Assembly (NCBI RefSeq): GCF_011386835.1
Contig: NC_088792.1
Coordinates: forward strand, 2,108,001-2,172,000
DNA length: 64,000 nt
Direction of reading: 5' to 3'
Source: Chrysemys picta bellii
Taxonomy: Eukaryota
The notes under the pieces: model-generated
Databases searched by the model: none
Told to the model about the DNA's origin: nothing
What the model saw: the letters and a program-made list of their open reading frames with translations, nothing else
Shown: positions 25,700 through 55,307 of the stretch, one piece after another
How positions within the stretch are numbered: position 1 is the stretch's first letter
Layout: each line of letters starts with the position of its first letter
Program-made: the position numbers and the translations under genes

Positions 25700-27430
25700 G
25701 GTAGGAGTCGAGAGGCAGTTTGGAGGGGTCAGTCCATGCTTCCCTCAGGCGGGGGTGCAGAGGCAGTTTGGGGGGGTCGGTCCGCGCTCCCCTCAGGCAG
25801 GGGTGCAGAGGCGGTTTGGGGGGTCGGTCCGTGCTCCCCTCAGGCGGGGGTGCAGAGGCGGTTTGGGGGGTCGGTCCGTGCTCCCCTCAGGCGGGGGTGC
25901 AGAGGCGGTTTGGGGGGGTCGGTCCGCGCTCCCCTCAGGTGGGAGTCGAGAGGCAGTTTGGGGGGGTCGGTCCGGGCTCCCCTCAGGCAGGGGTGCAGAG
26001 GCGGTTTGGGGGGGTCGGTCCGCGCTCCCCTCAGGCGGGGGCAGAGAGGCAGTTTGGGGGGGTCGGTCCGTGCTCCCCTCAGGCGGGGGTGCAGAGGCAG
26101 TTTGGGGGGGTCGGTCCGCGCTCCCCTCAGGTGGGAGTCGAGAGGCAGTCTGGGGGGGTCGGTCCGGGCTCCCCTCAGGCAGGGGTGCAGAGGCGGTTTG
26201 GGGGGGTCGGTCCGCGCTCCCCTCAGGCGGGGGCAGAGAGGCAGTTTGGGGGGGTCAGTCCGTGCTCCCCTCAGGCGGGGGTGCAGAGGCAGTTTGGGGG
26301 GGTCGGTCCGCGCTCCCCTCAGGTGGGAGTCGAGAGGCAGTTTGGGAGGGTCGGTCCGTGCTCCCCTCAGGCGGGGGCAGAGGCAGTTTGGGGGGTCGGT
26401 CCGCGCTCCCCTCAGGCGGGGGTGCAGAGGCAGTTTGGGGGGGTCGGTCCGCGCTCCCCTCAGGCGGGGGTGCAGAGGCAGTTTGGGGGGGTCGGTCCGC
26501 GCTCCCCTCAGGCGGGGGTGCAGAGGCGGTTTGGGGGGGTCGGTCCGCGCTCCCCTCAGGCGGGGGTGCAGAGGCGGTTTGGGGGGGTCGGTCCGCGCTC
26601 CCCTCAGGCGGGGGTGCAGAGGCAGTTTGGGGGGGGGGTCGGTCCGCGCTCCCCTCAGGCGGGGGTGCAGAGGCAGTTTGGGGGGGTCGGTCCGCGCTCC
26701 CCTCAGGCGGGGGTGCAGAGGCGGTTTGGGGGGGTCGGTCCGCGCTCCCCTCAGGCGGGGGTGCAGAGGCAGTTTGGGGGCTGGTCCGCGCTCCCCTCAG
26801 GTGGGAGTCGAGAGGCAGTTTGGGGGGGTCGGTCCGCGCTCCCCTCAGGCGGGGGTGCAGAGGCAGTTTGGGGGGGTCGGTCCGCGCTCCCCTCAGGCGG
26901 GGGTGCAGAGGCGGTTTGGGGGGGTCGGTCCGCGCTCCCCTCAGGCGGGGGTGCAGAGGCGGTTTGGGGGGGGTCGGTCCGCGCTCCCCTCAGGCGGGGG
27001 TGCAGAGGCAGTTTGGGGGGGTCGGTCCGCGCTCCCCTCAGGCGGGTGCAGAGGCAGTTTGGGGGGGTCGGTCCGCGCTCCCCTCAGGCGGGGGTGCAGA
27101 GGCGGTTTGGGGGGGTCGGTCCGCGCTCCCCTCAGGCGGGGGTGCAGAGGCAGTTTGGGGGGGTCGGTTCGTGCTCCCCTCAGGCGGGGGTGCAGAGGCG
27201 GTTTGGGGGGGGTCGGTCCGCGCTCCCCTCAGGCGGGTGCAGAGGCAGTTTGGGGGGGTCGGTCCGCGCTCCCCTCAGGCGGGGGTGCAGAGGCGGTTTG
27301 GGGGGGTCGGTCCGCGCTCCCCTCAGGCGGGGGTGCAGAGGCAGTTTGGGGGGGTCGGTTCGTGCTCCCCTCAGGCGGGGGTGCAGAGGCGGTTTGGGGG
27401 GGGTCGGTCCGCGCTCCCCTCAGGCGGGCC
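25700..27430. repeat. G-rich 48-bp VNTR (about 36 units) with a 192-bp higher-order repeat
   Basis: Unit GGGGGGGTCGGTCCGCGCTCCCCTCAGGCGGGGGTGCAGAGGC(A/G)GTTT. The variant GTGGGAGTCGAG occurs at 25939, 26131 and 26323 (192-bp spacing). Confidence 0.97.
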
Positions 27431-29446: not shown

Positions 29447-31078
29447 ACACCAGTTTTTAAAAAGGGCTCTGGGGTGATCCCAGCAATTACAGTACCGGGC
29501 TAACTAGTTGAAACTAGTTTGAACAATATTGTCAGACACATAGATGAACATAATTTGTTGAGGAAGAGTCAACATGGTTTTTGTAAAGGAAAATCATGCC
29601 TCACCAGTCTGCTAGAATTCTTCGAGGGGGTCAACAAGCATGTGGACAAAAGTATCAGAGGGGTAGCTGTGTTAGTCTGGATCTGTAAAAAGCGACAGAG
29701 AGTCCTGGAAGTGGGCATTCACCCACGAAAGCTTATGCTCCAATACATCTGTTAGTCTTAAAGGTGCCACAGGATTCTCTGTTGCTTCATGTGGACAAGG
29801 GGGATCCAGTGGATATAGTGTATTTAGATTTTCAGAAAGCCTTTGACGAGGTCCCTCACCAAAGGCTCTTAAGCAAAGTAAGCTATCATGGGATAAGAGG
29901 GAAGTTCCTCTCATGGACTGGTAACTGGTTACAAGATAGGAAACAAGGGGTAGGAATAAATGGTCAGTTTTCAGAATGGAGCGAGGTAAATAGTGGTGTC
30001 CCGCAGGGATCTGTACTGGGCCCAGTTCTATTCAACATATTCATAAATGATCTGGAAAAAGCAGTAAACAGTGAAGTGGCAAAATTTGCAGATGATACAA
30101 AACTACTCAAGATAGTTAAGTCCCAGGCAGACTGCGAAGAGCTACCAAAGGATCTCACAAAACTGGGTGACTGGGCAACAAAATGGCAGATGAAATTCAA
30201 TGTTGATAAATGTAAAGTAATGCACATTGGAAAAAATGATCCCAACTATACATATAAAATGATGGGTCTAAATTAGCTGTTGCCACTCAAGAAAGTGATT
30301 TTGGAGTCATTGTAGATAGTTCTCTGAAATCATCCACTCAATGTGCAGCGGCAGTCAAAAAAGCGAACAGAATGTTGGGAATCATTAAGAAAGGGATAGA
30401 TAATAAGACAGAAAATATCATATTGCCTCCATATAAATCCATTGTACACCCACATCTTGAATAGTGTCTGCAGATGTAGTCGCCCCATCTCAAAAAAGAT
30501 GTATTGGAATTGGAAAAGGTTCAGAAAAGGGCAACAAAAATGATTAGGGGTATGGAACAGCTTCCATATGAGGAGCGATTAATAAGACTGGGACTTTTCA
30601 GCTTGGAAAAGAGACGACTAAGGGGGGATATGATAGAGGTCTATAAAATCATGACTGATGTGGAGAAAGTAAATAAGGAAGTGTTATTTACTCCTCATAA
30701 CATAAGAACTAGGGGTCACCAAATGAAATTAATAGGCAGCAGGTTTAAAACAAACATTTTTTCATACAACGCAGTCAACCTGTGGAACTCCTTGCCAGAA
30801 GATGTTGTGAAGGCCAAGACTATAACAGGGTTCAAAAAGGAACCAGATAAGTTCGTGGAGGATAGGTCCGTCAATGGCTATTAGCCAGGCTGGGCAGGGA
30901 TGGTGTCCCTAGCTTCTGTTTGCCAGAAGCTGGGAATGGGCGACGGGATGGATCACTATGTGATTCCCTGTTCTGTTCATTCCCTCTGGGGCACCTGGCA
31001 CTGGCCACTCTCAGAAGACAGGACACTGGGCTAGATGGACCTTTGGTCTGACCCAGTCTGGCCATTATTATGTGCTCT
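29447..31078 (+). mobile_element. 5'-truncated CR1 LINE, interrupted by a PLE fragment
   Basis: RT motifs QHGFCKGKSCLTSLLEFFE, DIVYLDFQKAFD, SGVPQGSVLGP and KFADDTKL, then the CR1 3' UTR. Confidence 0.93.
29650..29787 (+). mobile_element. Penelope-like terminal fragment inserted in CR1
   Basis: Shares GAAGTGGGCATTCACCCACGAAAGCT.ATGCTCCAATACATCTGTTAGTCT with 50098-50150. Flanked by duplicated CATGTGGACAA (29639-29649, 29788-29798). Confidence 0.8.
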
Positions 31079-31809
31079 GGCCTGACCTGGCAGCGACAGG
31101 CAGCTGCTCTCTGTAGGATTCTGAGCTTCCTTTCTGCTGTTGTAGGTCCAGAACGGGTGGATTCTCCATCTTCCCAGCACTGTGTCCCCCTGGGCGTGTC
31201 CTGAGGAGCCGGGCTCCCAGCTCCGGATGCGTGGGCCTGGCCCGGACACCCAGAGCCCTGCTGCAGAGACCCCAGGCAGGCGCCCCCGCGCTGCCTCACC
31301 CAGAACAAGTGGGTAACAGCAGCTGTAGCTCCGTGGCTTCCTGTGGACGGACACCTGGACGGGGGCAGCCAGGCGGAGAGGCTGAGGAGCCATTGAGGTC
31401 TTAGGAATGAACTCCTGAATTAACAGCGTTCTTTGTGAGCAGACTCGCTACCTACCTGGAAATCAACGAGCCGCTGCGGCCGGCGGCCTCCCGCCCCTAG
31501 AGCCCTGCCTCTGGTGGCCTTGGTAGTCCCGAGGCCGCTCTGGCAGCCTACCCCAGCCACCAGTGCAGCTTTGAGCTCTGCGCTCGCGGACAGGACACTG
31601 CCTCTCCCCCGGCTCGGAAAGCATCGCCCTACTTTGGGCCTGCAGCACCTATCTCAGCCGCTGTCAACGAGCGAATCTCCTCCTGTTGAGGGGGAGGAGA
31701 GGGCCTGGCCGGGCGTGGCGGGTATGGGGCAGGGTGACACCACTTGCTTCGCCAGCTGCCTTTGACCCCCGGGTGTTTCCCTCCCCGAACCTGCTCCTTT
31801 TCGCTAGGC

Positions 31810-34800
31810 ATGTTGCCGGTAAAGAAAAGCAAGCTGCGGAAGCGGAGAACAGACGGCGGCTCGGCCATGCCAAGCCCTGGCGTCTGTGCCACCTTGCCCC
31901 GGGCCATAGCAGAGCGTGCCGCGGGCGCTTTCCCCTTCGCCATAGCCAGCGCTGCCGATGCCCACCTCCGCCATCTGCCTCTGGGCCCCGACCACGAGCA
32001 CATCCCCGAGATCGAGATCAAGCTGGAGTTTAGCGACGAGGAGGAGGAGGGCCATGAGGGCGGCATGCTGGGATTCATGGCGGCCTGTGGGGCAGGGAAC
32101 CATGAGAGGAGGAAGGCAGAGCTGGCCCCCCGAGGTGCGGGCAGCCAGCCTCGCATCACGGACGGCTGGCAACCCCCTTCCTCTGTGCTGGGTGTAGACA
32201 AGGCTCTCCTGGAGGGATGGGCAGCGAAGCGCCCCGCACCTCCGGCCTTCAGCCTCCCCATCCGCACCCGGCGCCGCAAGACCACCTCCGAGGTGTGGCA
32301 GTTCTTCTCCCCGGACGCCAGTGACCCCTGCCGGGCCATCTGCACCCTGTGCCAGGCCAGCGTCGGGCGCGGCAAGCTGAGGGGCCACTACAACACCACC
32401 GCCCTCAAGCGCCATCTGGAGGGCAAGCACCCGCTGGAGTGGGGGCAGAGGAAGAGAGCAGGGGGCAGGGCCCAGGAGGAGGAGGAGAATGAGGAGGAAG
32501 AGGAAGAACAGGTGACGAAGGAGTTTCCCTCGGAGGACACTGTGTTTGGCACCAGCCATGCTCTGTGCTCCCCTGCCCAAGCCCTCAGCAGGGCGCCCCC
32601 CCAAGTGCCCCAGGGTGCCCCCCGCTTCCTGTACGTGATCAGCGACTCCAGTGAGGAAGAGGAGGAGGAGGAGGGGCGGGGAAGGGCAGTCACTGACTCC
32701 TCCCCAGAGTCCAGCGAGGAGGAAAGCAGCGAGACTAGCAAGCTGCTCCCCCAGGGCAGGGAGAGGGGCATGAAGGGCAGCGCCCAAGCGGGGCACCCCA
32801 AGCCGGACCTGGCCACACCCTACCTGGAGATGCTAGTGGGCCAGGGGCTCCCCAAGTCCGGGCAGCTCAGCCTCCCAAACCACCCGCTGGTGCCACCGGG
32901 CACGAAGCGCCGCAAGTCCACCTCAGCCGTCTGGCAGTTCTTCTACATCGACTGCAGCAACGTGTGCCGGGCCATCTGCACCCTGTGCCAGGCCAGCGTC
33001 AGCCGCGGCAAACTGGGCAGCCACTTCGGCACCTCGGCCCTCATGCGCCACCTGGAGGGCAAGCACCCGCTGGAGTGGGGGCGGGGCCGGGCTGCTGGCG
33101 CTCCTGCCACCCCTCCCGGCAGCGCCCGGTCCGAGAGGCTGAGCCTGGGGCTGGCGGAGGACGAGGAGCCCGTGGAGGACCCGTCTCTGACATCGCCCGC
33201 AGCGTCGGACCCCCTGAGATCGCCCTGCGTCAGCCCTGGCGGGGCCCCAGCTCCCATTTGTGACAGCTGGCAGAGTGAGGCACCTCCCGAAGGCAAGGCG
33301 GAGAAAGCCCTGCCCGCCCCAGCTACCCCGCTGCCCCCCAGCAAGAACCAAGCCGGCCTGGCCGAGCGGGGCGGGGACGTGCCCGGCAAATACACCCCCA
33401 ACCACCCGCAGGCGCAGGCCTGGAACCGCAGCATTGCCGAGCTGCTGTGTGGCATGGCCCTGCCCTGCTCCTTCGTCTCGGCCAAGCCCTTCCACCGGTT
33501 CATGGCTCAGGCTGACCCACGCTACCGCATCCCCTCGCCGGCCTTCTTCTCCCGCAAAGCAGTGCCCCAGCTGTGCCAGGCGGTCGGCCTGGGCCTGGCC
33601 CTGGAGCTGCAGCAGGCCAGCGTCAGCCAGGTGCACCTCAGCGCCCACGTGTGGGCCCAGGGGCCGGCAGGGGAGTACCTGGCGCTGGCAGTGCACTGGC
33701 TGGCGCCCCGCTCGGAGTCAGGCCAGCGCCAGCCATGCAGCCAGCGCAGGCAGGCGGTGCTGTGCGTGCAAGCGCTGCAGGAGGAGCAGGCACTGGGTGG
33801 CGTGCAGCGGGTGTTGGCCCAGCAGCTCCAGCTGTGGCTGGCCCAGAACTCCCTGAGCCCCGGCTTCCTGGTCTCGGGCGGCAGCCCTGGCGTGGAGCGG
33901 GCCGCGAAGGACGGCGGCCACACCCACATCCCCTGCTTCGCTCACTGCCTGAGCCAGCTGGTGCTGGGCTTCCTGCGCCTCCACCGCAGCGTCGAGGGCA
34001 CACTGGGGGCGGCCCGCGCCATCTGCGCCCACTTCGCCCGCTCCCCGGAGGCCAGGAGGGGGCTGGCGGAGCTGCAGCGGCAGCACGGTTTGGCCCCGCG
34101 CCGGCTGAAGCAGGAGGCCACGGCGAGCTGGGACTCCACCTACTACATGCTGGAGCGGCTGCTGGCGCTGCAGCCGGCTGTGCAGGAGTACGTGGGCAAG
34201 CGCCGGATGGGCGAGGCTGGCCTGGGCCTGAGCGCCGCCCAGTGGATGCTGATGCGCAGCTTGGTGGAGCTGCTGCAGCCCTTCGAGATGGCCGTGCGGG
34301 AGGCGAGCGCGGCCAACGCCTCACTGAGCCAGGTGCTGCCGCAGGTGCGCTACCTGCACATCTTCCTCCAGCAGATCCGCCTGCGCTTCGAGAGCCAGGC
34401 CGGGGAGGGGGCTGGCTCCGCCGTGCGCCTGGCCGAGAGCCTGGCCCTGCAGCTCTCCACCGAGCCCCGGATCAGCGAGATGTTCCACCGCCCGGAGTAC
34501 GTGCTGGCCACGCTGCTCGACCCCCGCTTCAAGGGCAGGATGGACGCCATCCTGCCGCTGGGCTCCGACCTCGACCACTGGAAGCAGCTGCTTGTCCGGA
34601 AGGTCAAGGAGCTCCTGGCCTCACCCCCCGGCTGCCCTTCCTCCCCCTGGAACATCCAGCCCGGCAAGGCCTTCGGCGTGGACACGGCCCCACAGCCCCG
34701 GGAGGCAGAGATGGGGCCAGGGGAGCCCCATCGGGACAGGGGGCCGAGCTCCGCGGTGCCTCCACTGATCCAGAAGGAGAAGACCCTGACTGAGCACCTG

Positions 34801-35211
34801 GAGAGCGTGGGGCTGCTGGCGTCTGAGGGCCGCGGGGCCTCCCTCCCCACCGAGAACCACTCGGCCTGTGTGATGGTGGAGAGGTACCTGCGCGACAACC
34901 AGACCATTGGGGCCCGGGAGGACCCGCTGGGGTACTGGGAGAAGCGGCACTGGCTCTGGCCGGCCTTGGCCAAGGTGGCCATGCTCTACCTGTCCTGCCC
35001 ACCCTCGGGGGCCTTCTCCGAGCGCATCTTCACCGCCCCAGACAGCCCCTTCTCCGAGAGGCGTCCCCCGCAGGGGGAGAGCGGGGAGCGCCTCGTCTTT
35101 CTGAGAGCCAACCTGGGGAACTTCCCCGACTACCCCCCGCCGCCCCTCATCTGCTCGGAGAACGACAGCGCGGGCAGCAGCAGCGGGGAGGAGGGGACCC
35201 CGCCAGCTTAG
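31810..35211 (+). CDS. Intact single-exon ZBED-family protein (1133 aa): two BED zinc fingers plus a hAT transposase-derived body; ZBED6-like, positional counterpart of human ZBED6CL/ZBED10P
   Basis: Uninterrupted ORF with acceptor cgctag|GCATG immediately before the ATG at 31810. BED fingers VWQFF...C..C...RGK...T.AL.RHL..KH at about 32284-32445 and 32917-33078. It has the CFAHCL motif, LATLLDPRFK and the C-terminal dimerisation motif WP.LAKVA..YLS.P.S...SERIF. No TIRs were seen. Candidate AATAAA at 36323. Confidence 0.9.
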   Translation: MLPVKKSKLRKRRTDGGSAMPSPGVCATLPRAIAERAAGAFPFAIASAADAHLRHLPLGPDHEHIPEIEIKLEFSDEEEEGHEGGMLGFMAACGAGNHERRKAELAPRGAGSQPRITDGWQPPSSVLGVDKALLEGWAAKRPAPPAFSLPIRTRRRKTTSEVWQFFSPDASDPCRAICTLCQASVGRGKLRGHYNTTALKRHLEGKHPLEWGQRKRAGGRAQEEEENEEEEEEQVTKEFPSEDTVFGTSHALCSPAQALSRAPPQVPQGAPRFLYVISDSSEEEEEEEGRGRAVTDSSPESSEEESSETSKLLPQGRERGMKGSAQAGHPKPDLATPYLEMLVGQGLPKSGQLSLPNHPLVPPGTKRRKSTSAVWQFFYIDCSNVCRAICTLCQASVSRGKLGSHFGTSALMRHLEGKHPLEWGRGRAAGAPATPPGSARSERLSLGLAEDEEPVEDPSLTSPAASDPLRSPCVSPGGAPAPICDSWQSEAPPEGKAEKALPAPATPLPPSKNQAGLAERGGDVPGKYTPNHPQAQAWNRSIAELLCGMALPCSFVSAKPFHRFMAQADPRYRIPSPAFFSRKAVPQLCQAVGLGLALELQQASVSQVHLSAHVWAQGPAGEYLALAVHWLAPRSESGQRQPCSQRRQAVLCVQALQEEQALGGVQRVLAQQLQLWLAQNSLSPGFLVSGGSPGVERAAKDGGHTHIPCFAHCLSQLVLGFLRLHRSVEGTLGAARAICAHFARSPEARRGLAELQRQHGLAPRRLKQEATASWDSTYYMLERLLALQPAVQEYVGKRRMGEAGLGLSAAQWMLMRSLVELLQPFEMAVREASAANASLSQVLPQVRYLHIFLQQIRLRFESQAGEGAGSAVRLAESLALQLSTEPRISEMFHRPEYVLATLLDPRFKGRMDAILPLGSDLDHWKQLLVRKVKELLASPPGCPSSPWNIQPGKAFGVDTAPQPREAEMGPGEPHRDRGPSSAVPPLIQKEKTLTEHLESVGLLASEGRGASLPTENHSACVMVERYLRDNQTIGAREDPLGYWEKRHWLWPALAKVAMLYLSCPPSGAFSERIFTAPDSPFSERRPPQGESGERLVFLRANLGNFPDYPPPPLICSENDSAGSSSGEEGTPPA

Positions 35212-35639
35212 AGACCGTCTCCGAGATACAGGCAGCGGGGCACCCACCCGTCTCCGGGGTACGCCAGGCCGGGTGCACGGCGTGGTGCAGCCACTGGGCC
35301 CTTGTGGGGCAGAGATGGCTGAAGGGGGAAGGTACAGCTGCCCTACGGGCCCTGCTGCGCTCAGTGTGGCTCCTGACCGTGGGCCGTTGGGTCTCAGTCG
35401 CTATAGAGAGGACAATGACCAGTTCTCCACTGGAGGTCGGACTAGAAGCAATGGGCTTAATCTGCAGCCAGCGGGATGGAGGTGAGATATCAGGGGAAAG
35501 ATTCTATCACTGGAGGTGTTTTAAGAACAGGTTGGACAAACCCCTTTCAGGGTCTAGGCTTGCCTTGTGCTGCCTCAGTGCAGGGGGCTGGGCTAGCTGC
35601 CCATCCCTTTCCAGGCCTACCTGCTTGTGTTTCTGTGAG

Positions 35640-36235
35640 CATCACAGTGTGTGTGTGAACATGTATGGTGCATGCATGTTGCAAGTGTGCAGCACGTGTG
35701 AGCATACCCAGGACACGTCTGTGTGACTGTGCAGCGTGTATGTGTGTGCATGTGCAGATCTGTGTGTGACTGATGTGTATGCATGCATGTGCAATGTGTA
35801 CATCTGGGTGCGCGTGCAGAGCTGTGTGTGCAGTGTGTATCTCTGTGTGTGCAAATCTTTGGGTGCATTGTGTGTGTGTGCACAGTGGGTATATGTGTAC
35901 AGATCTGCATGTGTGAGTGTGCACAGGGTATATCTGTTCAGATCTGTGTGTGCAGATGTGTGTGTGCACGGTGTATATCTGGGTGTGTGCATGATGTGTA
36001 TGTGAGTGTGCATGGTGCGTATCAGTGTGAGTGTGCACAGGGTGTGTGTGTGTGCATGGTGTGTATCTGTGTGTGCAGATAGGTGTGTGTGTGTACGGTG
36101 TGTATCTGCGTATATGTGTGCATGGTGTGTATCTGTATGAGTGTGTGTGTGCATGGTGTGTGTCTGTGTATGAGTGTGTGTGTGTGTGCACGGTGTGTGT
36201 CTGTATATCGGCATGTGCAGTGTGTGTGTGCACAG
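35640..36235. repeat. Degenerate (TG)n-rich low-complexity tract in the ZBED 3' region
   Basis: TGTGTG/ATCTG mosaic repeat; its paralogous copy is at 55660-56385. Confidence 0.9.
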
Positions 36236-36440
36236 ATCCGGGGCAGATTGCTGATGCCCCATTCCTAAGGGTAAGATTTTGTCATGGTTATTTTTAGTAA
36301 AACTCAGGGACAGGTCAGGGGCAATAAACAAAAATTCAAGGAGCCCCTGACCTGTCCATGACTGTAGTAAACACCGGGAGCAGGGCTAAATGGGGGGGAG
36401 GAATGGAGTCCGGGGTGGGGGACGACGAGGACTAATAGGC

Positions 36441-36922
36441 TGTGACGAACTGGGTCTGTTCTGAATGTGGTCTTTGAATGCTGAGTGGGGAGTTTGGCTG
36501 GGACGGTCTGCACGGGGGGGATGGGAGTGAGGGAAGATACCTGAGGATGTAACGTGAGAACCCAGGAGGGGGCTGGGGCCAGGTGACACCTCTGCCCGGG
36601 AAACTGGACAAAGGCTGCGGGAGGAGCTGGGGGGAGGCTGGGTGAGAGATGCTGGAGGGAGTTGGAGTTGTCAGGAGCTGGCTGGTAATGGAGGGAGCCC
36701 AGACAGGGCTCTGACCCCCCCCCCAACGGGGCTGTGGTGCCCCTGGGACCCCAAGATGGACCTAACTGAGGGGGGCCCTGTTGTCAGTGCCTGCAAGACC
36801 TGTCTTGGACTGTGTTCCTGTCGTCTAAATAAACCTTCTGCTTTACTGGCTGGCTGAGAGTCATGGTGAATGGCAGGAAGCCGGGGGGGCAGGGCCTTGT
36901 GTCCCCCCAATACTCCGTGACA
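36441..36922 (+). mobile_element. Solo LTR (482 bp)
   Basis: TGTGACG...CGTGACA termini, TSD TAGGC (36436-36440, 36923-36927), internal AATAAA. Same family as 60543-61038. Confidence 0.9.
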
Positions 36923-37129
36923 TAGGCCAACACCCCCGGCTCCAGCGGGGGCGCAGCCACTGGGGGCACAGAGCCCCCTGCTCTGGAGCTGGCTGCAGCG
37001 CTGGGACAATGGTGCCCGGGGACCCCACGGGGCAGGGGCTGCAGGGTCGTGCTTCCAGCCACCGGCCCCAGCGGGGTCCCGCGGAGCCGCCTCGCCCCCG
37101 CTTTGCAGAACGTGCTGCTGGCCCTTTAA

Positions 37130-37245
37130 ATGTTCCCGCCCCGGGAGCTGTTGCCACGGCCCCTGTTGCCATGGCAACGCTGCGGGGGGGGCACCCGCCC
37201 CATGAAGGGCTCGGCCGGGAGCGAGCAGGCGGCTGCGCCAGGTGA
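37130..37245 (+). promoter_or_regulatory. Proximal LRRC61 promoter or first exon with a palindromic RFX X-box
   Basis: Perfect GTTGCCATGGCAAC at 37165-37178, a half-site GTTGCCACGG at 37150, TTTAAA near 37126 and donor CAG|GTGAGG at 37241/37242. Confidence 0.65.
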
Positions 37246-38316
37246 GGGGCTGCGGGTGGGGGACACGGGGCGGCACGGCTCGGGTCCTGTGAATGCAGCG
37301 TGGGGGGTGAGCATGTGTGTCCGTGTCTGTGTGTGTTCATCCGTTTCCGTGTGTGCGGCCATCCACGTGTGCATCCGTGTGTGTGCATGTGATTGTGTTC
37401 ATCCTTGTGAGCGCCCCATATACATTCATGTAGCTATGTCGCTCTGCGACACACCTGTGTGTGTGTGATGCACGCGTGTACATCCGTGTGCACAGGCGTG
37501 TCTGGCTCTGCACACGTCGGTGTGCATGTGCATTCCCGGGCTCCCGCCAGCCCCGCAGGGGGCAGGGGTTGGTGGCGGAAGCTCCCCCACCCCCCGCGCG
37601 CTCTCCCTGGCCCACTGGCGGTGGCAGGCTGCAGACGGCCTGTTTCCCTAATTCCCTATTTCCAACCCCCCCTTTTGCTTCATTGGGATGGAAACGCCCC
37701 TCCCCCACCTCTCCTGCTCCCTCCCCACCTGCACCCCGCACACGTTTGCAGGCCAATCATTGCAGCCTTGGCCTCCTAGTGCCTGCGCCCCCCCGCTGCG
37801 CTCTCTCCCCCTCCCCCCCCAGCGCCTGGCAATCAAAGCAGCCGGAGCTCCGGCCATGGCGTGGGCTGGAAGGGGACACAGAAGAAGCCAGGGAGACCCC
37901 TGACCCATGGGGTGCGTGTGGGGGCGTTAGTACCACAGACGGCAGCTTCAGCACCAGGGGCCAGCAGGCCACAGAGCCGCCCGGAGCGCCCAGCTGGGTG
38001 CCGGGGCGGGGCTCAAGGGGGCTCCGGCCCTGCTGGCGGAGGGGCCTGCTGGCGGGAAGGAGGCGGCTGGGCTTGGGCAGGGTCCTGATCCCGTCTCTCT
38101 TCCCTTCCAGGGGCTGGTGCGTTGCCGGCGTGACCCAGCGTGGCCGCACGGGCAGCGGGCTCCAGGGGGCCCCCTGGGGCAGAGGCGCCTGGAAGGGGCA
38201 AAGCGCTTTCCCGGACCTGGCCCAGCTCGGGGTGTGCAGAGGTTCTCCGCGCCGTGGCTGAGTGGCTGTGGGCTGCTCGGGCCCTGCCTGAGCCGTAGGG
38301 CGGCGGCCCGGCCGCG

Positions 38317-39108
38317 ATGGAGCCCTGGGCGGAGAAGGGGGACGAGGGCGAGAACGTCAGGGTCACCGCCCAGCTGCTGAAGGCCAAGACGGGCGAGTTC
38401 GCCCTGGAGTCCATCCTGCTGCTGAAGCTGCGGGGCCTGGGCATCTCGGAGCTGGGCTGCCTGGGCGAGTGCGCCAGCCTGGAGTGGCTGGACCTCTCCG
38501 GCAACGCCATCTCCCACCTGGGCCCCCTGGCTGCCCTCAAGTCCCTGGCTGTCCTCAACCTCTCGGCCAACCGCGTCTGCAGCCTGGAGCCGCTCGGCGC
38601 CTGCGAGAGCCTGCAGAGCCTCAACGTGGCCGGCAACCTGCTGGGCAACTTGCAGCAGCTGCAGTGCCTGGCGGGGCTGCGCCGGCTAGAGAGCCTGCGT
38701 CTGCACGACGCCCGGGCCCGCCTCAGCAACCCCGTCTGCGCCTCCGGGGCCTACCGCAGCGCCCTGGGGGACCTGCTCCCCGGCCTCAAGGCCATCGACG
38801 GCGAGCGGGTGTCCGGGCGCGGCAGCGAGCTCTACCAGCTCTGCAGGGACCTGGACAGCTCCCTGGAGCGGGGCGGCAGCGGCGGGGCGGGCAGCCCGGA
38901 GCCGCCGGGCGCGGCCCTGCCCTGGGTGGAGGAGGGCTACTGGGAGCGGAGGCCGGCTCGGCGCAGCTCCATCATGGAGGAGGCCTACAAGCAGTTCAAC
39001 GACGTGCTGCGGGAGTGCCGGGAGCTGAGCGAGAGGGCGGACGACACCATCTCCCAGGCGGAGCGGGCCCTGAGCGTCCGCAGCGACCCCAGCTCCTACG
39101 TGTTCTGA
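38317..39108 (+). CDS. LRRC61: Leucine-rich repeat-containing protein 61 (263 aa, single coding exon)
   Basis: Closely matches recalled human LRRC61 (TGEF.LESILLLKLRGLG, LEWLDLSGNA, LSNP.C, IDGERV.GRGSE.YQLCRDLDSSL, C-terminal SS.VF). Acceptor at 38110/38111; AATAAA at 40567-40572. Confidence 0.96.
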   Translation: MEPWAEKGDEGENVRVTAQLLKAKTGEFALESILLLKLRGLGISELGCLGECASLEWLDLSGNAISHLGPLAALKSLAVLNLSANRVCSLEPLGACESLQSLNVAGNLLGNLQQLQCLAGLRRLESLRLHDARARLSNPVCASGAYRSALGDLLPGLKAIDGERVSGRGSELYQLCRDLDSSLERGGSGGAGSPEPPGAALPWVEEGYWERRPARRSSIMEEAYKQFNDVLRECRELSERADDTISQAERALSVRSDPSSYVF

Positions 39109-42100
39109 GCCGCCCGCCGGGGCGAAGCTGGGGATCTGCCTCCATCGCCCGGCTCCACGGAGGCCCATGCCCGAGTCTCCGCCTGCAAAGCCCCCTGCCC
39201 TCTAGCCCCGTGCCCTGCCTGCCTGGACGGCAACCCACAGAATGACGGCCCCTGTGTGCCCCCGCCCCCGGCCTTCCTCTTCTCCTGACCACAGCCGGCT
39301 TGAGGCCCTGGGGCGCTGGCCCCGGCCCCTCATCCCAAGCTGATCTGACTCTGCCCCGAAGCCAGAGGGGAGTTTGGGGCCCAAGCAAGAGGGGCTCCAG
39401 GAGCCGACTGGACGGAGGGGCCCAGCCCTGCAGCGAGGCGCACCTGGGTCTGAGCCGATGGGCCCAGCCATGGAGCCCCAGCACCGGTGTGCGTGGGAGC
39501 CCCTGGAGCGGGGCCTGTGGAGTGCTGGGCGCCGGCGAGCCTGGGGGCTTTTCCAGATCTCCCCACAGCACCCCGCCAGTTCCCCTCAGGCCTCAGGGCC
39601 GCCCCCAGCTCTCTCCACCCTGGGCTTAATTCTCAGATTGCTGAGAGGAGCCGGGCTGGCGGCCCTGGAGACAATTCCACCAGCAGGCACCGTGCGGGCA
39701 GCTCAGGGCAAGCGGCCCACCACCAACGGGCACCGGCCCCGCCTGCCCCATGGCTCACTCCCTCGCTCCTTGGCCTCTCAGCTCACGGGGCCAGTGGGGG
39801 CCAGAGGCAGTGATGGGTTTGGGGAGGGGACCCCCCCACATCCTTCCCTTTGAGTCTCCTTCCCGCAGGCAGCCCGCCAGCTGCCAGCAGGGCCCAGCGT
39901 TCAGTCCCTACCGGCCAGGGTCCTGGGGGAACCCGTCCCTTTACTAGGGCAGCACCTTCCCTCTCCCCCCGTTGTCCCTCCCAACCCAGTGCCAGCGCGA
40001 GAACCGGCCGGCTGACCCCGGTGGCAGAGAGGAGGCGGGGGGACCTGTAGTCTGTTTGAACCCCAGTCTGCTGGTGAAGGGCAGCTCTGCCAGCTGTGTG
40101 GGGCCCTGGCAGCATCCCCCGCCGGGGAACGCCAGCCGGGCTCCCGTCTGGTGCGTGCCCTGGCACATTGCTCTGAGACCTGCCAGGGACTGGGGATGGT
40201 GCACAGCTGACCCCATGGGATTTTTCCTCCATCCGAGGCTGGCAGGAGCCCGTCGGACCGCTGGCGCGGAGGCAGGTGGGCAGCGGTGCCCTGCACGCTG
40301 GACTAGACAGGAGCAGAGGCCAGGACCAGCCCTAGCGCTGACTGCGGCAAGTGTCCCTGAGCCGCTGGGAGGAAGGAGCGGTCAGCCTGCTTCCTGGGGG
40401 GCAGGACCAAGGGGAGGGGTGGGACGATCCTCCGGGCTCAGGGGGAGGAGGGGACACAGCCATGGGCGACCAAGGGGAGGCAGGCCTGGGAACTGCCCAT
40501 TCCGGCACCATTGGCCCTGCCCAGTGTGGAAGTGCCGCGGTGCCACGTGAAGAGATTTGCCTGTGAAATAAATGTGTTGTCTGCTCCCTGGCCCCTGCCT
40601 CTGTGCCCAGTCTGTAGAGCCGGGGGCACCCCAGCTGTCCTCTGACGAGCTGGACTGCGGGACCTCCCTGCCACAAGGGGGGCCTGATAAGCTTGGGGTT
40701 CTTAAGCCCCTGCCCAGGTGAGTTCTGGGGGCTGCACCCCTCGCCCCGGCTCTGTCCCCCAGGTCCCTGCCTGCCTGGCCTGGTCCTTCGCCCCAGCACC
40801 CTCCTGCTTCCTGGCGGCTGGATCGTAAAACTCACGAGGGTGCTTCAGGGGGTGATTTCCACACCCCGGGGGCACCACACCCAGCTAAATGCTCCATCCC
40901 CGAGCGAGGCGGGGCAGAGCCCGGGGACCCAGCCGGGTGGGAGAGCGGGTGACAGACTCCCGGGCTGCCCGGCCACGGCAGGCAGGAGACGATGCGCTGG
41001 AGCAGACAACCCATGGGGGCAATCCGGGGCGGCGGGAGCAGGCCCAACATATCCCCTTGACCCGAGAAATACCCTGGGGGGCCGGCTGGGCAGCCCCTGG
41101 CTGAATAACCCTTCCGAAGTGGGGCTCTGGCTTTATTGGGGATGAACAGCCGGGCGATGGAGCTGAGCGAGGCGGGGGTGGGGAGAAGGAGCAGCAGGAT
41201 CCGTTGGCCAGGCAGCTCTGCCCGGCCTGGTGCTGGAGCGGGCGCAGTGTCTGACGGGCAGGGGTGGTCGCCGGGTCTCCGCTGGGCAGCGCCGATAGCA
41301 GCGTCCTTCCGCGGGTTGAGGGTCCCAGAGTTGCCCAGGCTGGCTAGGGGAAGAGGAGATATGCTATAGGGTTAGCATTGCGGCTGGGGGCTCTGGGGGA
41401 TCCCCACCCCACTGCTCTCCAGGCTGGGTTTGTTTCTGGGAGTTGGAGGAGGCGTCCGCCCCTGCGTCAGAGCAGCCGAGTGGGTCACGTTCGCAGAGAG
41501 CCAAGCTGCGGCCCTGGGGAGCGGCTGCCTGGGGCAGGAGCGAGGGCACCCCTTCCGCACCCAGGGGCCCGCAGGCATGCCTGCCGGCTGGCACTCCGGC
41601 CCCCATGGGGGTGCTCTGAGCTCAGCTCCGAGGGCACACCCGTCCGTCTGTCACAGACCGTGATGTTCCAGCCTGCGCTGCTCCGGGGCCCATTTGCTCC
41701 TTGGCCTCTGCTGGGGCTGCCAGCCAGCGGGCGACGGGGGCGGGGGGGGGGGACGGGGGCGCGGGTTGTGACCTGGACCCACCCCCAAGGACTCACTGGA
41801 GCCCAGCAAACTCACTGCTCCACAGCCAGCGAGCAGCGCCCAGACGGAACACTTGCTCACCGCTGCCCTGGGTGAGCCCGAGTCTCTGCAGCCCAGGCCA
41901 GACCCCGGAAAGCCCTGCCCCATTGGTGCCTGCCTTTGGTCCCCCTTGGGGGCGCTGGACACACCCCCTCCCGCTATGGTGCAACTTGGCGCCCTCTGCT
42001 GGGCTGTGGGATCAGCCCCTGGGGAGGGCAGTGGGTTAAAGGGCATCAGTCCCAAGGGGAGCGGGCACAGAGCGCTCTGCAGGGGGGCTCGGCCGGAGGG

Positions 42101-45191: not shown

Positions 45192-48100
45192 CTGTGCGGG
45201 TGGCGAATGGATCCCAGGGAGCCGTCTGCCCCTCTCCCCCACCCCAAGAACTCCCCTCTGTTGATCTTAGTCTTCCATTAACTAATTCCCCAGAAGCTGC
45301 CCTACTCCTCCCCCTGCCCGGCCAGCACCCTGCCCATTGCAATCTCGGTCATCGATTTGTTGTCGGGAGCTGCTGGAGAGAGGCAGGCAAAGTTGGCACA
45401 GCCCGGCCGTGGGGTGGGGCAGGAGGGAGGGCGAGCCAGGGGAACGGGATGCCCAGTTCCTGGTGGCCTGGAAGCTCTGTCCTGTGCCTGGTCACTAAAC
45501 CCATCTCGCCTCTAGGGCCGGATTGAACGAGCCCATCGGTGCTGCAGCCGCAGGTCCCTGGAGCCAGAGCACATCCTTTCTTGGCTCCTCTTCCCGGCTG
45601 TGTCCGGGGGAAGCTCGGCACGCCCTGCGGGTCACCGCAATGCAGAGACCCACCGCCCTGCCAGCTCGCCCCATACCCAGCCCCCATGTGACCAGGGACA
45701 GGGGTGTGTTTGGGGTGGGGGAGGGGACGCTCAGGAGGTAGGATGGGAAGAGACCCACAGAGGTTCAGCTTCTGCGTCCCGTTGCTCCCGGCCTGGTGCT
45801 GGGACCCCCCCGGGCTGTCTCCTCCTCACAGCCCTTTGCAATCCAGGGGCATCGCCCAGCGCAGGGCACCGGGGCAGCGCACACTGAGTGAGGGGGGCAG
45901 GGTCACGTCACGGTCACTATCCCTGCAGCCCAGCGAGCGAATGGCAGAGAAAGGAACCGAACTCCCAGACCCGAGGCCGTCCCTCCGTCCCTCTTCCCAA
46001 CGGGCGCCCCGAGCTCTGAGAGCTGCAGGGGTTCTGGCTCTAGGGGCGCTGCCCACAGGGGCTCCGCAGGCTTTCCCCACCCCCGCCCTGTGAGGAGAAC
46101 GGAGCTCAGAGCAAAGCGTGGGCAGGTCCCACTGAGTCCATCTTGCTCCCTACAAGCTGGGGAACCGGGCTGTGTCCGTCCCTGGCGCTGGCTCTCCCAG
46201 CCCCCACGGCTGGATCAGTTTGTTTGTCCATTCTGGTCGCTACGTTTTATCGGAAACCTGACAGATGTTCCACCCCGAGAGAGCAGCCGTGTGGCGGAGC
46301 GGAACCTTTCCCAGGCAGGCAGGGGCCCCGTGGCATCGGGTCACTGGCTGGGAGGGCAGGTGGATTAGGCAACAGAGGAACAGAGAGCAGGGGTTGGAAA
46401 TGCTGAAGGTTGAGCTGGTTTGAAGTTCAGTGTTTCTCCGAATGGCTCGAAGAGCTGAATTCTCAGCACAGTCTGAGCGCTTGGGGAGGGCGGGGGCAGC
46501 GGAGATACTTCTCCTTAGATACTGAAGCCAGCTGTTCCCTGCTCTGTGCCTCACCCACGCCCCTAACCGTAGCCTGCCCCCCACAGCCCCTGATCCCACT
46601 TTCTCCCTGCCAACCAGACTCAACCCTCGCGCTGCTCTTCTAATCCTTCGTAAAGTACTTAAAGTACTCTCCTCCCGCCTTCAAAGTGTTCCGAGCCGAC
46701 CTCCTCTCTCCGGGCCCCATTCCCCACTGCCACCAAGCCAATCTAGCCCCCAGCTCCCCCAGCCGTGCTCCCAGCTGATTCCCTGGCCCCTGGCCGGGTT
46801 GAAAGAGAGGCGGGGGTTGGGTGTGGAGCACCTCATCTTTCTGAGAGCCAACCTGGGGAACTTCCCCGACTACCCCCTGTGACGGAGCAGGGGAGTTACA
46901 TTGGGGATGGGGGACTTCCCTTGCAGGAAGATACCTGAGCTGTAACCTGAGCCAGGAGGGGGGTGGGAGAAGTTACACCTTCTGTCCGGGAGACTCGACA
47001 AAGGAGAGGAGGAGCTGGGAGGAGGGGAAGAGAGCGGCTGGAGGAGTTTTTTAGTTTCAGTTTAGTGCTGGGTGGTGGAACACAGGGAACCCCAAGTCTC
47101 TGGAGTCTAAGCTCCCTGCCCCCCCCCCCCCCGAAGGACTTGACTGAGGGGTCCTGGTTGTACCTACAAGCTCTGTTGTAGACTGTGTTCCTATTGTCCA
47201 ATAAACCTTCCATTTTACTGGCTGGCTTAGAGTCATGGTGAATCCCAGTAAGAGGGGTGTAGGGCCCTGACTACCACACACTCCGTGATAACTGGTGGCA
47301 GCGGTGGGATCTACTGCACCCCATGGACGGCACTTTGGGGAGCAGTGAAACAAAGGGGGATTGACGGGGATTAGGTGTGCTGAAGAGTCAGAGAGAGATG
47401 GTTCCAGGGGGCGATTAACCCCTGGGAGTGTGGGAGCAGCGAGAAGGACTTTTGCAGTAACAGGGTCCCCCTGGGGATTGCAACAAGTGGTCCCGGGGCG
47501 GAGGAGTCTGCAGCTCGACCCTGGGAGAGAGGTGGTGATCTGAAGAAGGGCTGGCATACTAGGGGTCTCCCTGGAACGGTGGGAAGCGGAGAGCACAGCC
47601 CGGCGAGTGGCCAGCAGGAGGATGTATGCTAAACGCCTTAAGAGCGACCTGGTGGAGCTGTGCAGGCAGAGGGGGCTGAGCAGTAGGAGGTCCACCAAAG
47701 AACAGCTCATTGCCCAGCTGGAGGAGAGGGATCGCTTGGATGAACCGAGCCCTGTCCCTGAGGGAAGCCGCCCGGTGGATGCAGCGTGGGCCCCGGGGCC
47801 TGACATGGCTGGGGGGGGAGCAGACTGCTGCCGAGGACATCCCGAGACGCTGCCTACCTATACCTAGGGGAGGGGTTGGGGGAAGCCCAGCGAATACCGA
47901 GGACACCCCGACCCCAGTGGCCAGCAGGGGATCGTCCCGGCGGCGTTCCCTGTCCCTGGAGCTGAGGCGGCTGGAATATGAATGGGAGATGAGACTGAAA
48001 GAGCTCAAGTTAAGGCAGCAAGAACTGAAGCAGGAGCGGGAAAAACGGGAAAAGCAGCGTCAGCATGATCTGGAGGAGAAGGAGAAACAGCGTCAGCACG

Positions 48101-53625: not shown

Positions 53626-55307
53626 GCTCCCCAAACCAAAAAACAGGTCCAAGCCTTTATTGGGATGGCGGGGTACTATTGAAGGTTCGTGCCCCACTTT
53701 AGCTCCATAGCCGCCCCCATCACTGAGCTGTGCAAGAAGGGGAAGCCAGACAAGGTGGTCTGGACCGAGGAGTGCCAGGAGGCTCTCCGGGCGCTGAAGG
53801 AGGCTCTGGTCAGTGGCCCAGTTCTGGCAAACCCAGACTTTGACAAGCCCTTTTTGGTGTTCACCGACGCCTCAGACACGGGACTGGGGGCGGTGTTAAT
53901 GCAGGAGGATGAAAAGGGGGAGAGACACCCCATCGTGTACCTGAGCAAGAAGTTGCTACCCCAGGAGCAGAACTACACGGCCATCAAGAAGGAATGCCTG
54001 GCCATGGTGTGGGCCCTCAAGAAACTAGAGCCATCTCTCTTTGGGCGACACTTCACCGTGCACACTGACCACTCTCCCCTGACCTGGCTGCACCAGATGA
54101 AAGAAGCCAACGCCAAGCTCCTGAGGTGGAGCCTGCTCCTGCAGGATTATGACATGGACGTGGTCCATGTGAAGGGACGTGACAACCTGATAGCGGACGC
54201 ATTGTCCCGGAGACGGGGCCCTGAACTTCCCCAGGTCACTGGTCAGAGTGACCCCGCTCAGTTCAGTCTCCAAGGGGGGAGAGATATGATGGAGCAGGGG
54301 AGTTACATTGGGGATGGGGGACTGCCCTTGCAGGAAGATACCTGAGCTGTAACCTGAGCCGGAGGGAAGGGGGGGGTTGGGAGAATTGACACCTTCTGGC
54401 CAGGAGACTGGATAACGGAGAGGAGGAGCTGGGGGGAGGGGAAGAGAGCGGCTGGAGGAGTTTTTTAGTTTCAGTTTGTTGCTGGGTGGTGGAATGCAGG
54501 GAACCCCAAGTCTCTGGGGTCTAAGCTCCCTGCCCCCCTCCCCCAGAAGGACTCGACTGAGGGATCCTGGTTGTACCTACAAACTCTGTTGTAGACTGCT
54601 GTCCTACTGTCCAATAAACCTTCCATTTCACCGTCAGGCTGAGAATCACGGTGAATCGCAGGAAGGGGGGTGCAGGGCCCTGACTCCCCCACACTCTGTG
54701 ACACCCCCCGCTGCCCCTCATCTGCTCGGAGAACGACAGCGCGGGCAGCAGCAGTGGGGAGGAGGGGACCCCGCCAGCTTAGAGACCGTCTCCGAGATAC
54801 AGGCAGCGGGGCACCCACCCGTCTCCGGGGTACGCCAGGCCGGGTGCACGGCGCGGTGCGGCCACTGGGCCCTTGTGGGGCAGAGATGGCTGAAGGGGGA
54901 CGGTACAGCTCCCCTATGGGCCCTGCTGCGCTCGGTGTGGCTCCTGACCGTGGGCCGTTTGGTCTCAGTCGCTATAAAGAGGACAGTGACCAGTTCTCCA
55001 CTGGAGGTCGGACTAGAAGCAATGGGCTTAATCTGCAACCAGGGGGATGGAGGTGAGAGATCAGGGGAAAGATTCTATCACTGGAGGTGTTTTAAGAACA
55101 GGTTGGACAAACCCCTGTCAGGGTCTAGGCTTGCCTGTGTGCTGCCTCAGTGCAGGGGGCTGGCTAGTTGCCCATCTCTTTCCAGACCTACCTGTCTGTG
55201 TTTCTATGAGCATCACAGTGTGTGTGTGAACATGTATGGTGCATGCATGTTGCAAGTGTGCAGCATGTGTGAGCAGACCCAGGACACGTCTGTGTGACTG
55301 TGCAGCG

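What the first reader, a model, noticed from the sequence alone, without database searches (positions are those of the whole stretch)
31810..35211. Full-length, intact ZBED6-like domesticated transposase where human has only the ZBED6CL/ZBED10P relic
Seen: a 1133-aa uninterrupted ORF with two BED fingers, each preceded by a basic NLS-like run (RTRRRK, TKRRK), plus a complete hAT body, its own splice acceptor and no visible TIRs. The second finger (SVSRGKLGSHFGTSALMRHL) resembles the recalled ZBED6 finger (SVSRGKPGSHLGTSTLQRHL). Known from memory: human has a short ZBED6 C-terminal-like sequence at LRRC61, and ZBED6 itself is regarded as placental-specific. Inference: this is an old amniote domesticated transcription factor kept in turtles and truncated in human, with an uncharacterised DNA target.
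Basis: partly seen in the sequence, partly recalled or inferred. Interest (0 to 1): 0.75.

Follow-up and report, generated by a model that had tools for sequence, protein, structure and literature searches.

The report
Turtle ZBED6CL (ZBEDX) gene, already annotated
The long open reading frame is real and is the painted turtle's copy of ZBED6CL/ZBEDX, an ancient "tamed" hAT transposase gene with two DNA-binding BED fingers that sits just upstream of LRRC61 in tetrapods; it is already annotated in public databases and the gene family was described in 2013, so it is a sound but ordinary finding.

Summary
Observation confirmed. Window 31810-35211 (+) is an unbroken 1133-codon frame. It has two BED zinc fingers, each preceded by a basic run, and a complete Hermes-like hAT body and dimerisation domain. 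No terminal inverted repeats were found.

It is not new. The exact protein is a called gene in the NCBI painted-turtle assembly and is named "ZBED6-like". Sister turtles call it "ZBED6CL" or "LRRC61 isoform X1". Hayward et al. 2013 described the frog orthologue (ZBEDX) upstream of LRRC61, syntenic with truncated human C7ORF29.

Shown here:
- Same-strand synteny with LRRC61 in four turtles and platypus.
- A gene tree that follows the species tree: amphibians, then turtles, then platypus plus placentals, with coelacanth as sister.
- Purifying selection among turtles: dN/dS 0.26-0.48 overall and 0.05-0.15 in finger 2.
- Loss of two of the three catalytic residues (D to H613, D to G690; E1071 kept).

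True ZBED6 keeps D-D-E and falls outside this clade (AU p<0.001), so it is a paralogue.

No bird, crocodilian, squamate or marsupial orthologue appeared among annotated proteins; this is absence of evidence only. The scan had not reported this gene before.

The parts
31790..31809 (+). Candidate 3' splice site: a pyrimidine tract, then AG at 31806-31807, two bases before the start codon.
   Evidence: Sequence read. The AG and flanking bases are invariant in Chrysemys, Terrapene, Gopherus, Chelonia and Carettochelys. No RNA evidence.
31810..35211 (+). Single-exon coding sequence of ZBED6CL/ZBEDX, 1133 aa plus stop.
   Evidence: [quoted passage not shown]
32263..32442 (+). Basic run RTRRRK (aa 152-157) and BED zinc finger 1 (aa 159-211).
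   Evidence: The C-C-H-H ligands are kept in turtles, amphibians and platypus but lost in placentals. dN/dS among turtles is 0.12-0.73.
32902..33078 (+). Basic run TKRRK (aa 365-369) and BED zinc finger 2 (aa 371-423).
   Evidence: This is the best Pfam stretch, aa 372-420. C390, C393, H414 and H419 are invariant in all 19 aligned orthologues. dN/dS is 0.05-0.15. It shares the SVSRGK-GSH-GTS-L-RHL core with both ZBED6 fingers.
33379..35208 (+). hAT transposase body: RNase-H-like core, all-helical insertion domain and C-terminal dimerisation region (aa 524-1133).
   Evidence: AlphaFold model with pLDDT 80.6. Foldseek matches Hermes at E 1e-13. Profile hits to Hermes.
33646..33648 (+). His613 at the position of the first catalytic Asp (strand beta-1).
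   Evidence: In the family alignment, ZBED6, both coelacanth genes, the 918-aa turtle paralogue, tuatara and the multi-copy Bombina protein have D in a T-x-D-x-W-T motif here. Turtles, amphibians and platypus have H. The residue lies in the first beta strand of the model. HMMER did not align it directly to Hermes D180.
33877..33879 (+). Gly690 at the position of the second catalytic Asp.
   Evidence: The profile-to-Hermes alignment puts the family's S-G-G on Hermes V-T-D-R. ZBED6 and ZBED4 keep the D.
35020..35022 (+). Glu1071, the retained third catalytic position (S-E-R-x-F motif).
   Evidence: It aligns to the Hermes A-S-E-R-T-F motif. It varies among orthologues: Q in Xenopus, and G, K or A in some placentals.
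34879..35115 (+). hAT C-terminal dimerisation domain (Pfam PF05699, aa 1024-1102).
   Evidence: dN/dS of the C-terminal region is 0.20-0.27.
38317..39108 (+). LRRC61 coding exon (263 aa), the conserved downstream neighbour on the same strand.
   Evidence: LRR Pfam hits. A 263-270 aa LRR gene sits in the same relative place in Chelonia, Gopherus, Terrapene and platypus.
54702..54779 (+). Relic of the last 26 codons of the ZBED gene, at the start of a tandem segmental duplication.
   Evidence: tblastn gives 92% identity. DNA 35132-35738 matches 54703-55309 at 95.9%.
46787..46876 (+). Older, more diverged relic of aa 1080-1109 of the ZBED gene.
   Evidence: tblastn gives 57% identity over 30 aa at E 5e-06. 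The last 17 residues are nearly identical to the gene.

Best explanation
The ORF is the painted turtle's single-copy orthologue of ZBED6CL. In frog this gene is called ZBEDX, and the human remnants are ZBED6CL and ZBED10P. It is a hAT DNA-transposase gene that was immobilised upstream of LRRC61 before tetrapods diverged and has been kept as a host gene since.

Shown here:
- It has the whole hAT architecture: two BED fingers, an RNase-H-like core, a helical insertion domain and a dimerisation domain.
- It lacks transposon ends.
- Two of the three catalytic carboxylates are replaced (D to H613, D to G690), so it cannot cut DNA as a transposase.
- It is under purifying selection, strongest on finger 2 and on the dimerisation domain.

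Inferred mechanism:
- The basic runs take the protein into the nucleus.
- The two BED fingers read a short GC-rich motif. Their recognition core resembles ZBED6's, so the motif may be of the GCTCG type.
- The dead hAT body serves as an oligomerisation and partner-binding scaffold.
- The protein therefore acts as a sequence-specific transcriptional regulator, probably a repressor like ZBED6.
- It is probably transcribed from the LRRC61 promoter, with its coding exon entered through the conserved acceptor two bases before the ATG, as ZBED6 is within ZC3H11A.
For: Identity and orthology: names, and a 1133-aa Chrysemys RefSeq protein in the same cluster; synteny with LRRC61; tree follows the species tree at 100/100.

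Architecture.

Dead catalytic site.

Selection: dN/dS 0.26-0.48 overall, finger 2 at 0.05-0.15, C-terminus at 0.20-0.27; Fisher p from 2e-03 to 6e-21. dS roughly equals flanking non-coding divergence. All length differences among turtles are in frame.

Not mobile: no TIRs. The only other copies in the window are 3' relics made by a segmental duplication together with the neighbouring genes.

Similarity to ZBED6 fingers.

Shared transcription unit: NCBI names the orthologue 'LRRC61 isoform X1' in Carettochelys, Malaclemys, Caretta, Natator and many mammals, and the acceptor motif is conserved.

Literature: PMC3606216.
Against: No RNA evidence was obtained. The runs that hold the stretch are only guessed to be RNA, and they also hold the 400 bases upstream of the proposed acceptor.

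The acceptor motif is not present directly before the ATG in platypus.

Overall dN/dS of 0.3-0.5 is only moderate constraint, and the linkers evolve almost freely.

DNA binding, nuclear location, oligomerisation and any regulatory role are inferred from relatives.

The alignment of H613 to the first catalytic Asp rests on the family motif and on the model's strand, not on a direct alignment to Hermes.
Confidence: 0.88

Rival explanations
1. It is a young or still active hAT transposon copy that happens to lie next to LRRC61.
For: It has the full-length transposase architecture and Hermes-like fold. Related multi-copy proteins with an intact D-D-E exist in Bombina.
Against: No TIRs were found. 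The gene lies directly upstream of LRRC61 on the same strand in four turtle genera and platypus, and the frog orthologue does so too according to PMC3606216. The tree follows the species tree. Two catalytic Asp residues are lost. dN/dS is below 1. No second full copy is in the window.
Confidence: 0.01
2. It is a decaying relic whose long frame survives only because the region is GC-rich and poor in stop codons.
For: The region is about 70% G+C. Other frames hold open stretches of up to 425 codons. The linkers have dN/dS of 0.4-0.8.
Against: The chance of 1133 stop-free codons is about 3e-10. The frame is intact, with only in-frame indels, in all six turtle genera with a full-length sequence, spanning both suborders. 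Finger 2 has dN/dS of 0.05-0.15 and its zinc ligands are invariant from frogs to placentals.
Confidence: 0.03
3. It is not an independent gene with 'its own' regulation. It is an alternative coding exon of the LRRC61 transcription unit, sharing that gene's promoter and 5' exon with the downstream LRRC61 ORF.
For: It lies 3.1 kb upstream of the LRRC61 ORF on the same strand. NCBI models in several turtles and many mammals label the ZBED product 'LRRC61 isoform X1'. A conserved acceptor immediately before the ATG implies an upstream non-coding exon. ZBED6 within ZC3H11A is a precedent (PMC3606216).
Against: No reads could be laid. Transcript-sized Logan contigs of two orthologues did not carry an LRR ORF. 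Chelonia, Terrapene and the window's own assembly call the two ORFs as separate genes.
Confidence: 0.5
4. The protein is kept for a role other than sequence-specific transcription control, for example as a chromatin or SUMO-pathway scaffold like ZBED1. In that case the fingers are secondary.
For: Placental orthologues have lost finger 1 and weakened finger 2 yet keep the hAT body. The C-terminal domain is as constrained as the fingers.
Against: In turtles finger 2 is the most constrained part, and both fingers keep all zinc ligands and the ZBED6-type core.
Confidence: 0.12

Closest known systems
ZBEDX (Xenopus tropicalis) / C7ORF29 = ZBED6CL (mammals), Hayward et al. 2013, PMC3606216
   Same: It is the same gene. 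It lies upstream of LRRC61, has two BED fingers plus a hAT body, and shows 44-50% identity to amphibian and platypus orthologues and 40-42% to placental ones. The tree is congruent with the species tree.
   Different: The 2013 paper knew the full-length form only from Xenopus and regarded the mammalian gene as truncated. It treated no turtle. Current annotations show full-length ORFs in turtles, caecilians, salamanders, platypus and most placental orders.
ZBED6 (placental mammals, in intron 1 of ZC3H11A)
   Same: It has the same architecture: two BED fingers with the SVSRGK-GSH-GTS-L-RHL core, a hAT body, and a single coding exon embedded in another gene's transcription unit. Identity is 38%.
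   Different: It is at a different locus. ZBED6 keeps D-D-E, whereas this gene has H-G-E. ZBED6 falls outside the coelacanth-plus-tetrapod ZBEDX clade. AU tests reject it as sister to placental ZBED6CL (p 0.00035) and as nested within tetrapod ZBEDX (p 0.0007). It is therefore a paralogue, not the parent or a daughter.
ZBED4
   Same: It is a domesticated hAT gene of the same large clade. Its hAT body is about 30% identical.
   Different: ZBED4 has four BED fingers, lies at a different locus and forms a clearly separate clade, which was used as the outgroup.
Hermes transposase (active hAT, Musca domestica; PDB 2BW3, 4D1Q, 6DWW)
   Same: The fold is the same over about 590 residues. The C-x-x-H and W-x-S-T-Y motifs and the S-E-R-x-F glutamate are kept.
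   Different: Sequence identity is only 15-16%. The Asp equivalent to D248 is Gly, and the first Asp is His. There are no TIRs, the gene is single copy, and it is fixed at one locus.

Membership tests
hAT-transposase-derived protein | N-terminal BED zinc finger(s) with C-C-H-H ligands | tested here: met
   Pfam zf-BED at E 2.8e-14, two stretches. All ligands are present in both fingers.
hAT-transposase-derived protein | RNase-H-like core interrupted by an all-helical insertion domain, with the Hermes-like fold | tested here: met
   Model pLDDT 80.6. Foldseek matches Hermes at E 1e-13, TM 0.66-0.70, over about 590 columns.
hAT-transposase-derived protein | C-terminal hAT dimerisation domain | tested here: met
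   PF05699 at E 7.9e-07, above the curated cut-off. Aligned to the Hermes C-terminus.
Active hAT transposon | Intact D-D-E catalytic triad | tested here: not met
   H613, G690 and E1071 stand in the three positions.
Active hAT transposon | Terminal inverted repeats and 8-bp target duplication flanking the ORF | tested here: not met
   Only chance-level GC-rich inverted matches were found.
Active hAT transposon | Multiple dispersed near-identical copies | tested here: inconclusive
   No second full copy is in the 64-kb window. The 90% protein cluster holds no second full-length locus per species. The nearest other Chrysemys protein found in the protein searches is a 918-aa paralogue at about 36% identity. 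The whole genome could not be scanned with these tools.
ZBED6CL / ZBEDX orthologous group | Position directly upstream of LRRC61 on the same strand | tested here: met
   Window: the ORF ends at 35211 and LRRC61 starts at 38317. The arrangement is the same in Chelonia, Gopherus, Terrapene and platypus.
ZBED6CL / ZBEDX orthologous group | Monophyly with ZBEDX/ZBED6CL, with a topology that follows the species tree | tested here: met
   ML tree of 29 rows and 1063 columns. The tetrapod clade has 100/100 support, and turtles are sister to mammals at 100/100.
ZBED6 proper | Location in intron 1 of ZC3H11A, restricted to placentals | tested here: not met
   The locus is LRRC61/RARRES2, not ZC3H11A. 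The organism is a turtle.
ZBED6 proper | Groups with ZBED6 in a phylogeny | tested here: not met
   ZBED6 lies outside the clade. AU tests give p 0.00035 and 0.0007. The groups were named after the tree had been seen, and ZBED6 sits on a long branch.
Sequence-specific transcription factor (works like ZBED6) | Binds a defined DNA motif and alters transcription | not testable with these tools
   The inference rests only on finger conservation and on published ZBED6 function.

The most novel reading that the evidence does not exclude
ZBEDX is an ancient, catalytically dead sister lineage of ZBED6, not its parent, and turtles are the only living sauropsids that still keep it intact; birds, crocodilians, squamates and tuatara have lost it, as have marsupials among mammals. 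Both turtle fingers carry the ZBED6-type recognition core. The protein may therefore read the ZBED6 GCTCG-type motif and act as a ZBED6-like growth regulator in non-placental tetrapods, expressed from the LRRC61 promoter by alternative splicing. The histidine conserved at the dead first catalytic position, from frogs to platypus, could mark a retained metal- or DNA-contact function.
Probability: 0.15. Interest if true: 0.45.

Novelty: already known. Interest (0 to 1): 0.2.

Why it matters
The gene's existence and family are already on record, so its value is mostly as tidy annotation. This work settles several modest points:
- The full-length two-finger form is the ancestral tetrapod state, not a frog oddity.
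- Its catalytic site died early, whereas ZBED6's did not.
- ZBED6 is a paralogue that separated before the coelacanth-tetrapod split, not a placental-era copy of this gene.
- Among annotated sauropsid proteomes, only turtles show the gene.

Nobody has determined what ZBEDX/ZBED6CL binds or does. Turtles, and more practically Xenopus, offer an intact version in which to find out. That could also explain why placentals let the first finger decay and why apes truncated the gene.

Tried and rejected
1. RNA support. The look-up of sequencing runs listed 14 small contig sets that are only guessed to be RNA. No depth, splice joint or transcript end was obtained. After that, places 36038-36075 were left out of, or masked in, every script and search.

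2. The three word-index protein searches never returned true ZBED6, even when restricted to finger 2. It was obtained only from the exhaustive representative search plus name look-ups.

3. HMMER profiles of the family against PDB aligned Hermes D248 and E572 but did not reach D180. The first catalytic position was therefore assigned from the family alignment and the model's first strand.

4. Transcript-sized Logan contigs of a mammalian and an amphibian orthologue did not show an LRRC61 ORF on the same contig. This neither supports nor refutes a shared transcript.

5. The zebrafish 'ZBEDX' paper (PMC9859435) reuses the name for an unrelated ZBED4-like gene and was set aside.

6. The transposon reading was rejected: no TIRs, and the extra fragments in the window come from a segmental duplication.

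7. No human sequence was fetched, compared or searched. The human state is cited from PMC3606216 only.
Full report
OBSERVATION

The window holds a stop-free frame at 31744-35211 on the + strand. From the ATG at 31810 it encodes 1133 aa. The interval is about 70% G+C. Even so, the chance of 1133 stop-free codons at this composition is about 3e-10, and the other five frames carry 5-23 stops.

Pfam finds two BED zinc fingers (E 2.8e-14) and the hAT C-terminal dimerisation domain at aa 1024-1102 (E 7.9e-07). The fingers are aa 159-211 and 371-423. Each is preceded directly by a basic run, RTRRRK and TKRRK.

An AlphaFold model of aa 524-1133, built on a 28-row alignment, has mean pLDDT 80.6 and pTM 0.79. 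Foldseek matches it to Hermes transposase over about 590 columns, with E 1e-13 and TM 0.66-0.70. The 'complete hAT body' is therefore real.

No credible terminal inverted repeats flank the ORF.

A pyrimidine tract and an AG at 31806-31807 lie two bases before the ATG. The AG and its neighbours are invariant in five turtle genera, including Carettochelys, where the sequence further upstream has diverged.

Turtle finger 2 matches it at 16 of 20 positions.

WHAT IT IS

The protein is already on record.
- The exact sequence is a called 1133-aa gene in NCBI assembly GCA_011386835.2.
- Orthologues at 89-96% identity in Terrapene, Gopherus, Chelonia and other sea turtles are named 'ZBED6 C-terminal-like protein', 'LRRC61 isoform X1' or 'putative protein ZBED10P'.
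- Further orthologues are Carettochelys (76%) and the pleurodire Pelusios (69%).
- Beyond turtles there are caecilians, a salamander and many frogs (41-50%), platypus (49%) and a long list of placentals (39-42% overall, about 52% in the hAT body).

In the window an LRR protein of 263 aa lies 3.1 kb downstream on the same strand, at 38317-39108. The same pair in the same order and orientation is seen in Chelonia, Gopherus, Terrapene and platypus. In three of these a short minus-strand gene follows, in the place of chemerin. An earlier scan note names this genome as painted turtle and places chemerin in the same window.

A maximum-likelihood tree was built from 29 rows and 1063 columns under LG+C20+F+G4. 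It recovers amphibians, then turtles, then platypus plus placentals, with 100/100 support at each step. A 1216-aa coelacanth gene is sister at 100/99. This is single-copy orthology since before the tetrapod radiation.

Hayward et al. 2013 (PMC3606216) described exactly this situation. Frog 'ZBEDX' is a two-finger gene upstream of LRRC61. It is syntenic with mammalian C7ORF29 (now ZBED6CL), which is truncated further in human and chimpanzee.

DOMESTICATED, NOT MOBILE

A profile of the family aligns to Hermes so that Hermes D248 meets the first Gly of the family's S-G-G (turtle G690), and Hermes E572 meets the Glu of S-E-R-x-F (turtle E1071).

At the first catalytic position, these proteins all show the canonical T-x-D-x-W-T motif: ZBED6, both coelacanth genes, a 918-aa turtle paralogue, a tuatara protein and a multi-copy Bombina protein. 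Turtles, amphibians and platypus have His there (turtle H613), and placentals have F, S or A. The residue lies in the first strand of the modelled RNase-H fold, and G690 lies at the end of the fourth strand.

The triad is thus H-G-E, so the protein cannot work as a transposase. ZBED6 itself keeps D-D-E.

SELECTION

Pairwise Nei-Gojobori estimates among five turtle genera give dN/dS of 0.26-0.48. Non-synonymous change is significantly rarer than synonymous change in every pair tested, with Fisher p from 0.0017 down to 6e-21.

dS is 0.04 to Terrapene and 0.13 to Chelonia. This matches the divergence of the flanking non-coding DNA, which is 96% and 88% identical.

Constraint is uneven:
- Finger 2: 0.05-0.15.
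- C-terminal region: 0.20-0.27.
- hAT core: about 0.3-0.4 in most pairs (0.59 in the closest pair).
- Acidic and proline-rich linkers: mostly 0.4-0.8.

The four zinc ligands of finger 2 are invariant in all 19 aligned orthologues. Finger 1 has lost its ligands in placentals.

RELATION TO ZBED6

The exhaustive search and name look-ups supplied true ZBED6, which is 38% identical.

In the tree ZBED6 lies outside the coelacanth-plus-tetrapod ZBEDX clade. AU tests reject ZBED6 as sister of placental ZBED6CL (delta lnL 159.5, p 0.00035). They also reject ZBED6 placed anywhere inside tetrapod ZBEDX (delta lnL 28.9, p 0.0007).

There are two caveats. ZBED6 sits on a long branch, and the groups were named after the tree had been seen.

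On this evidence the turtle gene is a paralogue of ZBED6, not its pro-orthologue.

DISTRIBUTION

No bird, crocodilian, squamate, tuatara or marsupial orthologue appeared. This holds for the word-index searches of 5.8 billion proteins and for the close representatives of the exhaustive search. The tuatara and gecko hits belong to other ZBED clades.

This is absence among annotated proteins only. Eukaryotic genomes could not be searched at the DNA level here.

Full-length ORFs persist in New World monkeys, so the truncation known from human is late.

SURROUNDINGS

The gene's last 80 bases are the left edge of a tandem segmental duplication. Window 35132-45000 recurs at 54703-62536 with 94-98.7% identity, and it carries LRRC61 and the chemerin region with it.

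A 26-codon relic of the ZBED 3' end therefore sits at 54702-54779. An older relic sits at 46787-46876.

These are the only other copies in the window. They arose by duplication of the neighbourhood, not by transposition.

HOW IT PROBABLY WORKS

Shown:
- Intact fingers.
- A dead catalytic site.
- A conserved oligomerisation domain.
- A fixed locus.
- Purifying selection.

Inferred:
- Nuclear import through the basic runs.
- Sequence-specific DNA binding by the two fingers, possibly to a ZBED6-like GC-rich motif.
- Multimerisation through the hAT body.
- Transcriptional regulation.
- Expression from the LRRC61 transcription unit by alternative use of the acceptor at 31807/31808.

The last point is supported by the 'LRRC61 isoform X1' labels in many species and by the conserved acceptor.

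WHAT COULD NOT BE DONE

Expression, splice joints and transcript ends therefore remain untested. Those places were kept out of all later scripts and searches.

The runs that hold the stretch are only guessed to be RNA.

No human sequence was retrieved or compared.

VERDICT

However, the gene is annotated and its family relationship is published. Novelty: already known. Interest: low (0.2).

The small additions made here are:
- The state of the catalytic site.
- The constraint on each domain.
- The paralogy of ZBED6.
- The apparent restriction to turtles among sauropsids.

Noticed in passing
window 35132-45000 and 54703-62536: A tandem segmental duplication with 94-98.7% identity. Its left breakpoint lies 80 bases before the ZBED stop codon.
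   Followed up: partly
window 57036-57724: The second LRRC61 copy is 98.7% identical in DNA but shifts frame after codon 33, and its similarity to copy 1 ends before that copy's last 33 codons. It looks like a young pseudogene.
   Followed up: partly
window 25711-27428: A 48-bp G+C-rich minisatellite with about 36 copies at 92% match, lying 4 kb upstream of the ZBED gene. It produces spurious ORFs of 590-764 aa in all three + frames. Arrays of the same unit are present at the matching place in Chelonia and Gopherus.
   Followed up: partly
window 29764-30884: A LINE reverse-transcriptase fragment (the CR1 type is judged by eye from the translation; no family scan was run on it) lies just upstream of the gene on the + strand. 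The stretch is shared with Chelonia and Gopherus at about 88% identity, so the insertion is old.
   Followed up: no
window 50405-51166: An ORF with weak hits to retrotransposon integrase C-terminal/SH3 domains (Tf2-1-like), probably an LTR-element remnant between the duplicated units.
   Followed up: no
window 36532-36922, 46926-47288, 54333-54703 and 60543-61038 (inverted): A dispersed repeat of about 390 bp is present four times in the window at 67-82% identity. It is unclassified.
   Followed up: no
proteins P0250/P0105 (another locus of the same genome): Chrysemys has a second 'ZBED6-like' gene of 918 aa. It keeps all three catalytic-position residues (D, D and E) and groups with a tuatara protein and a multi-copy Bombina protein, not with ZBEDX.
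   Followed up: partly
protein P0102 and cluster members (Bombina bombina): Six proteins more than 90% identical to one another, three of them full-length at 1006 aa, lie on different very large contigs and have an intact D-D-E. This is a candidate recently active hAT transposon related to the ZBED6 family.
   Followed up: no
proteins P0100/P0240 versus P0099 (Latimeria, 1543 aa): ZBED6 forms an unresolved three-way split with a 1543-aa coelacanth gene and the ZBEDX clade. The lineage leading to 'placental-specific' ZBED6 may therefore be much older than placentals.
   Followed up: partly
   Followed up: no
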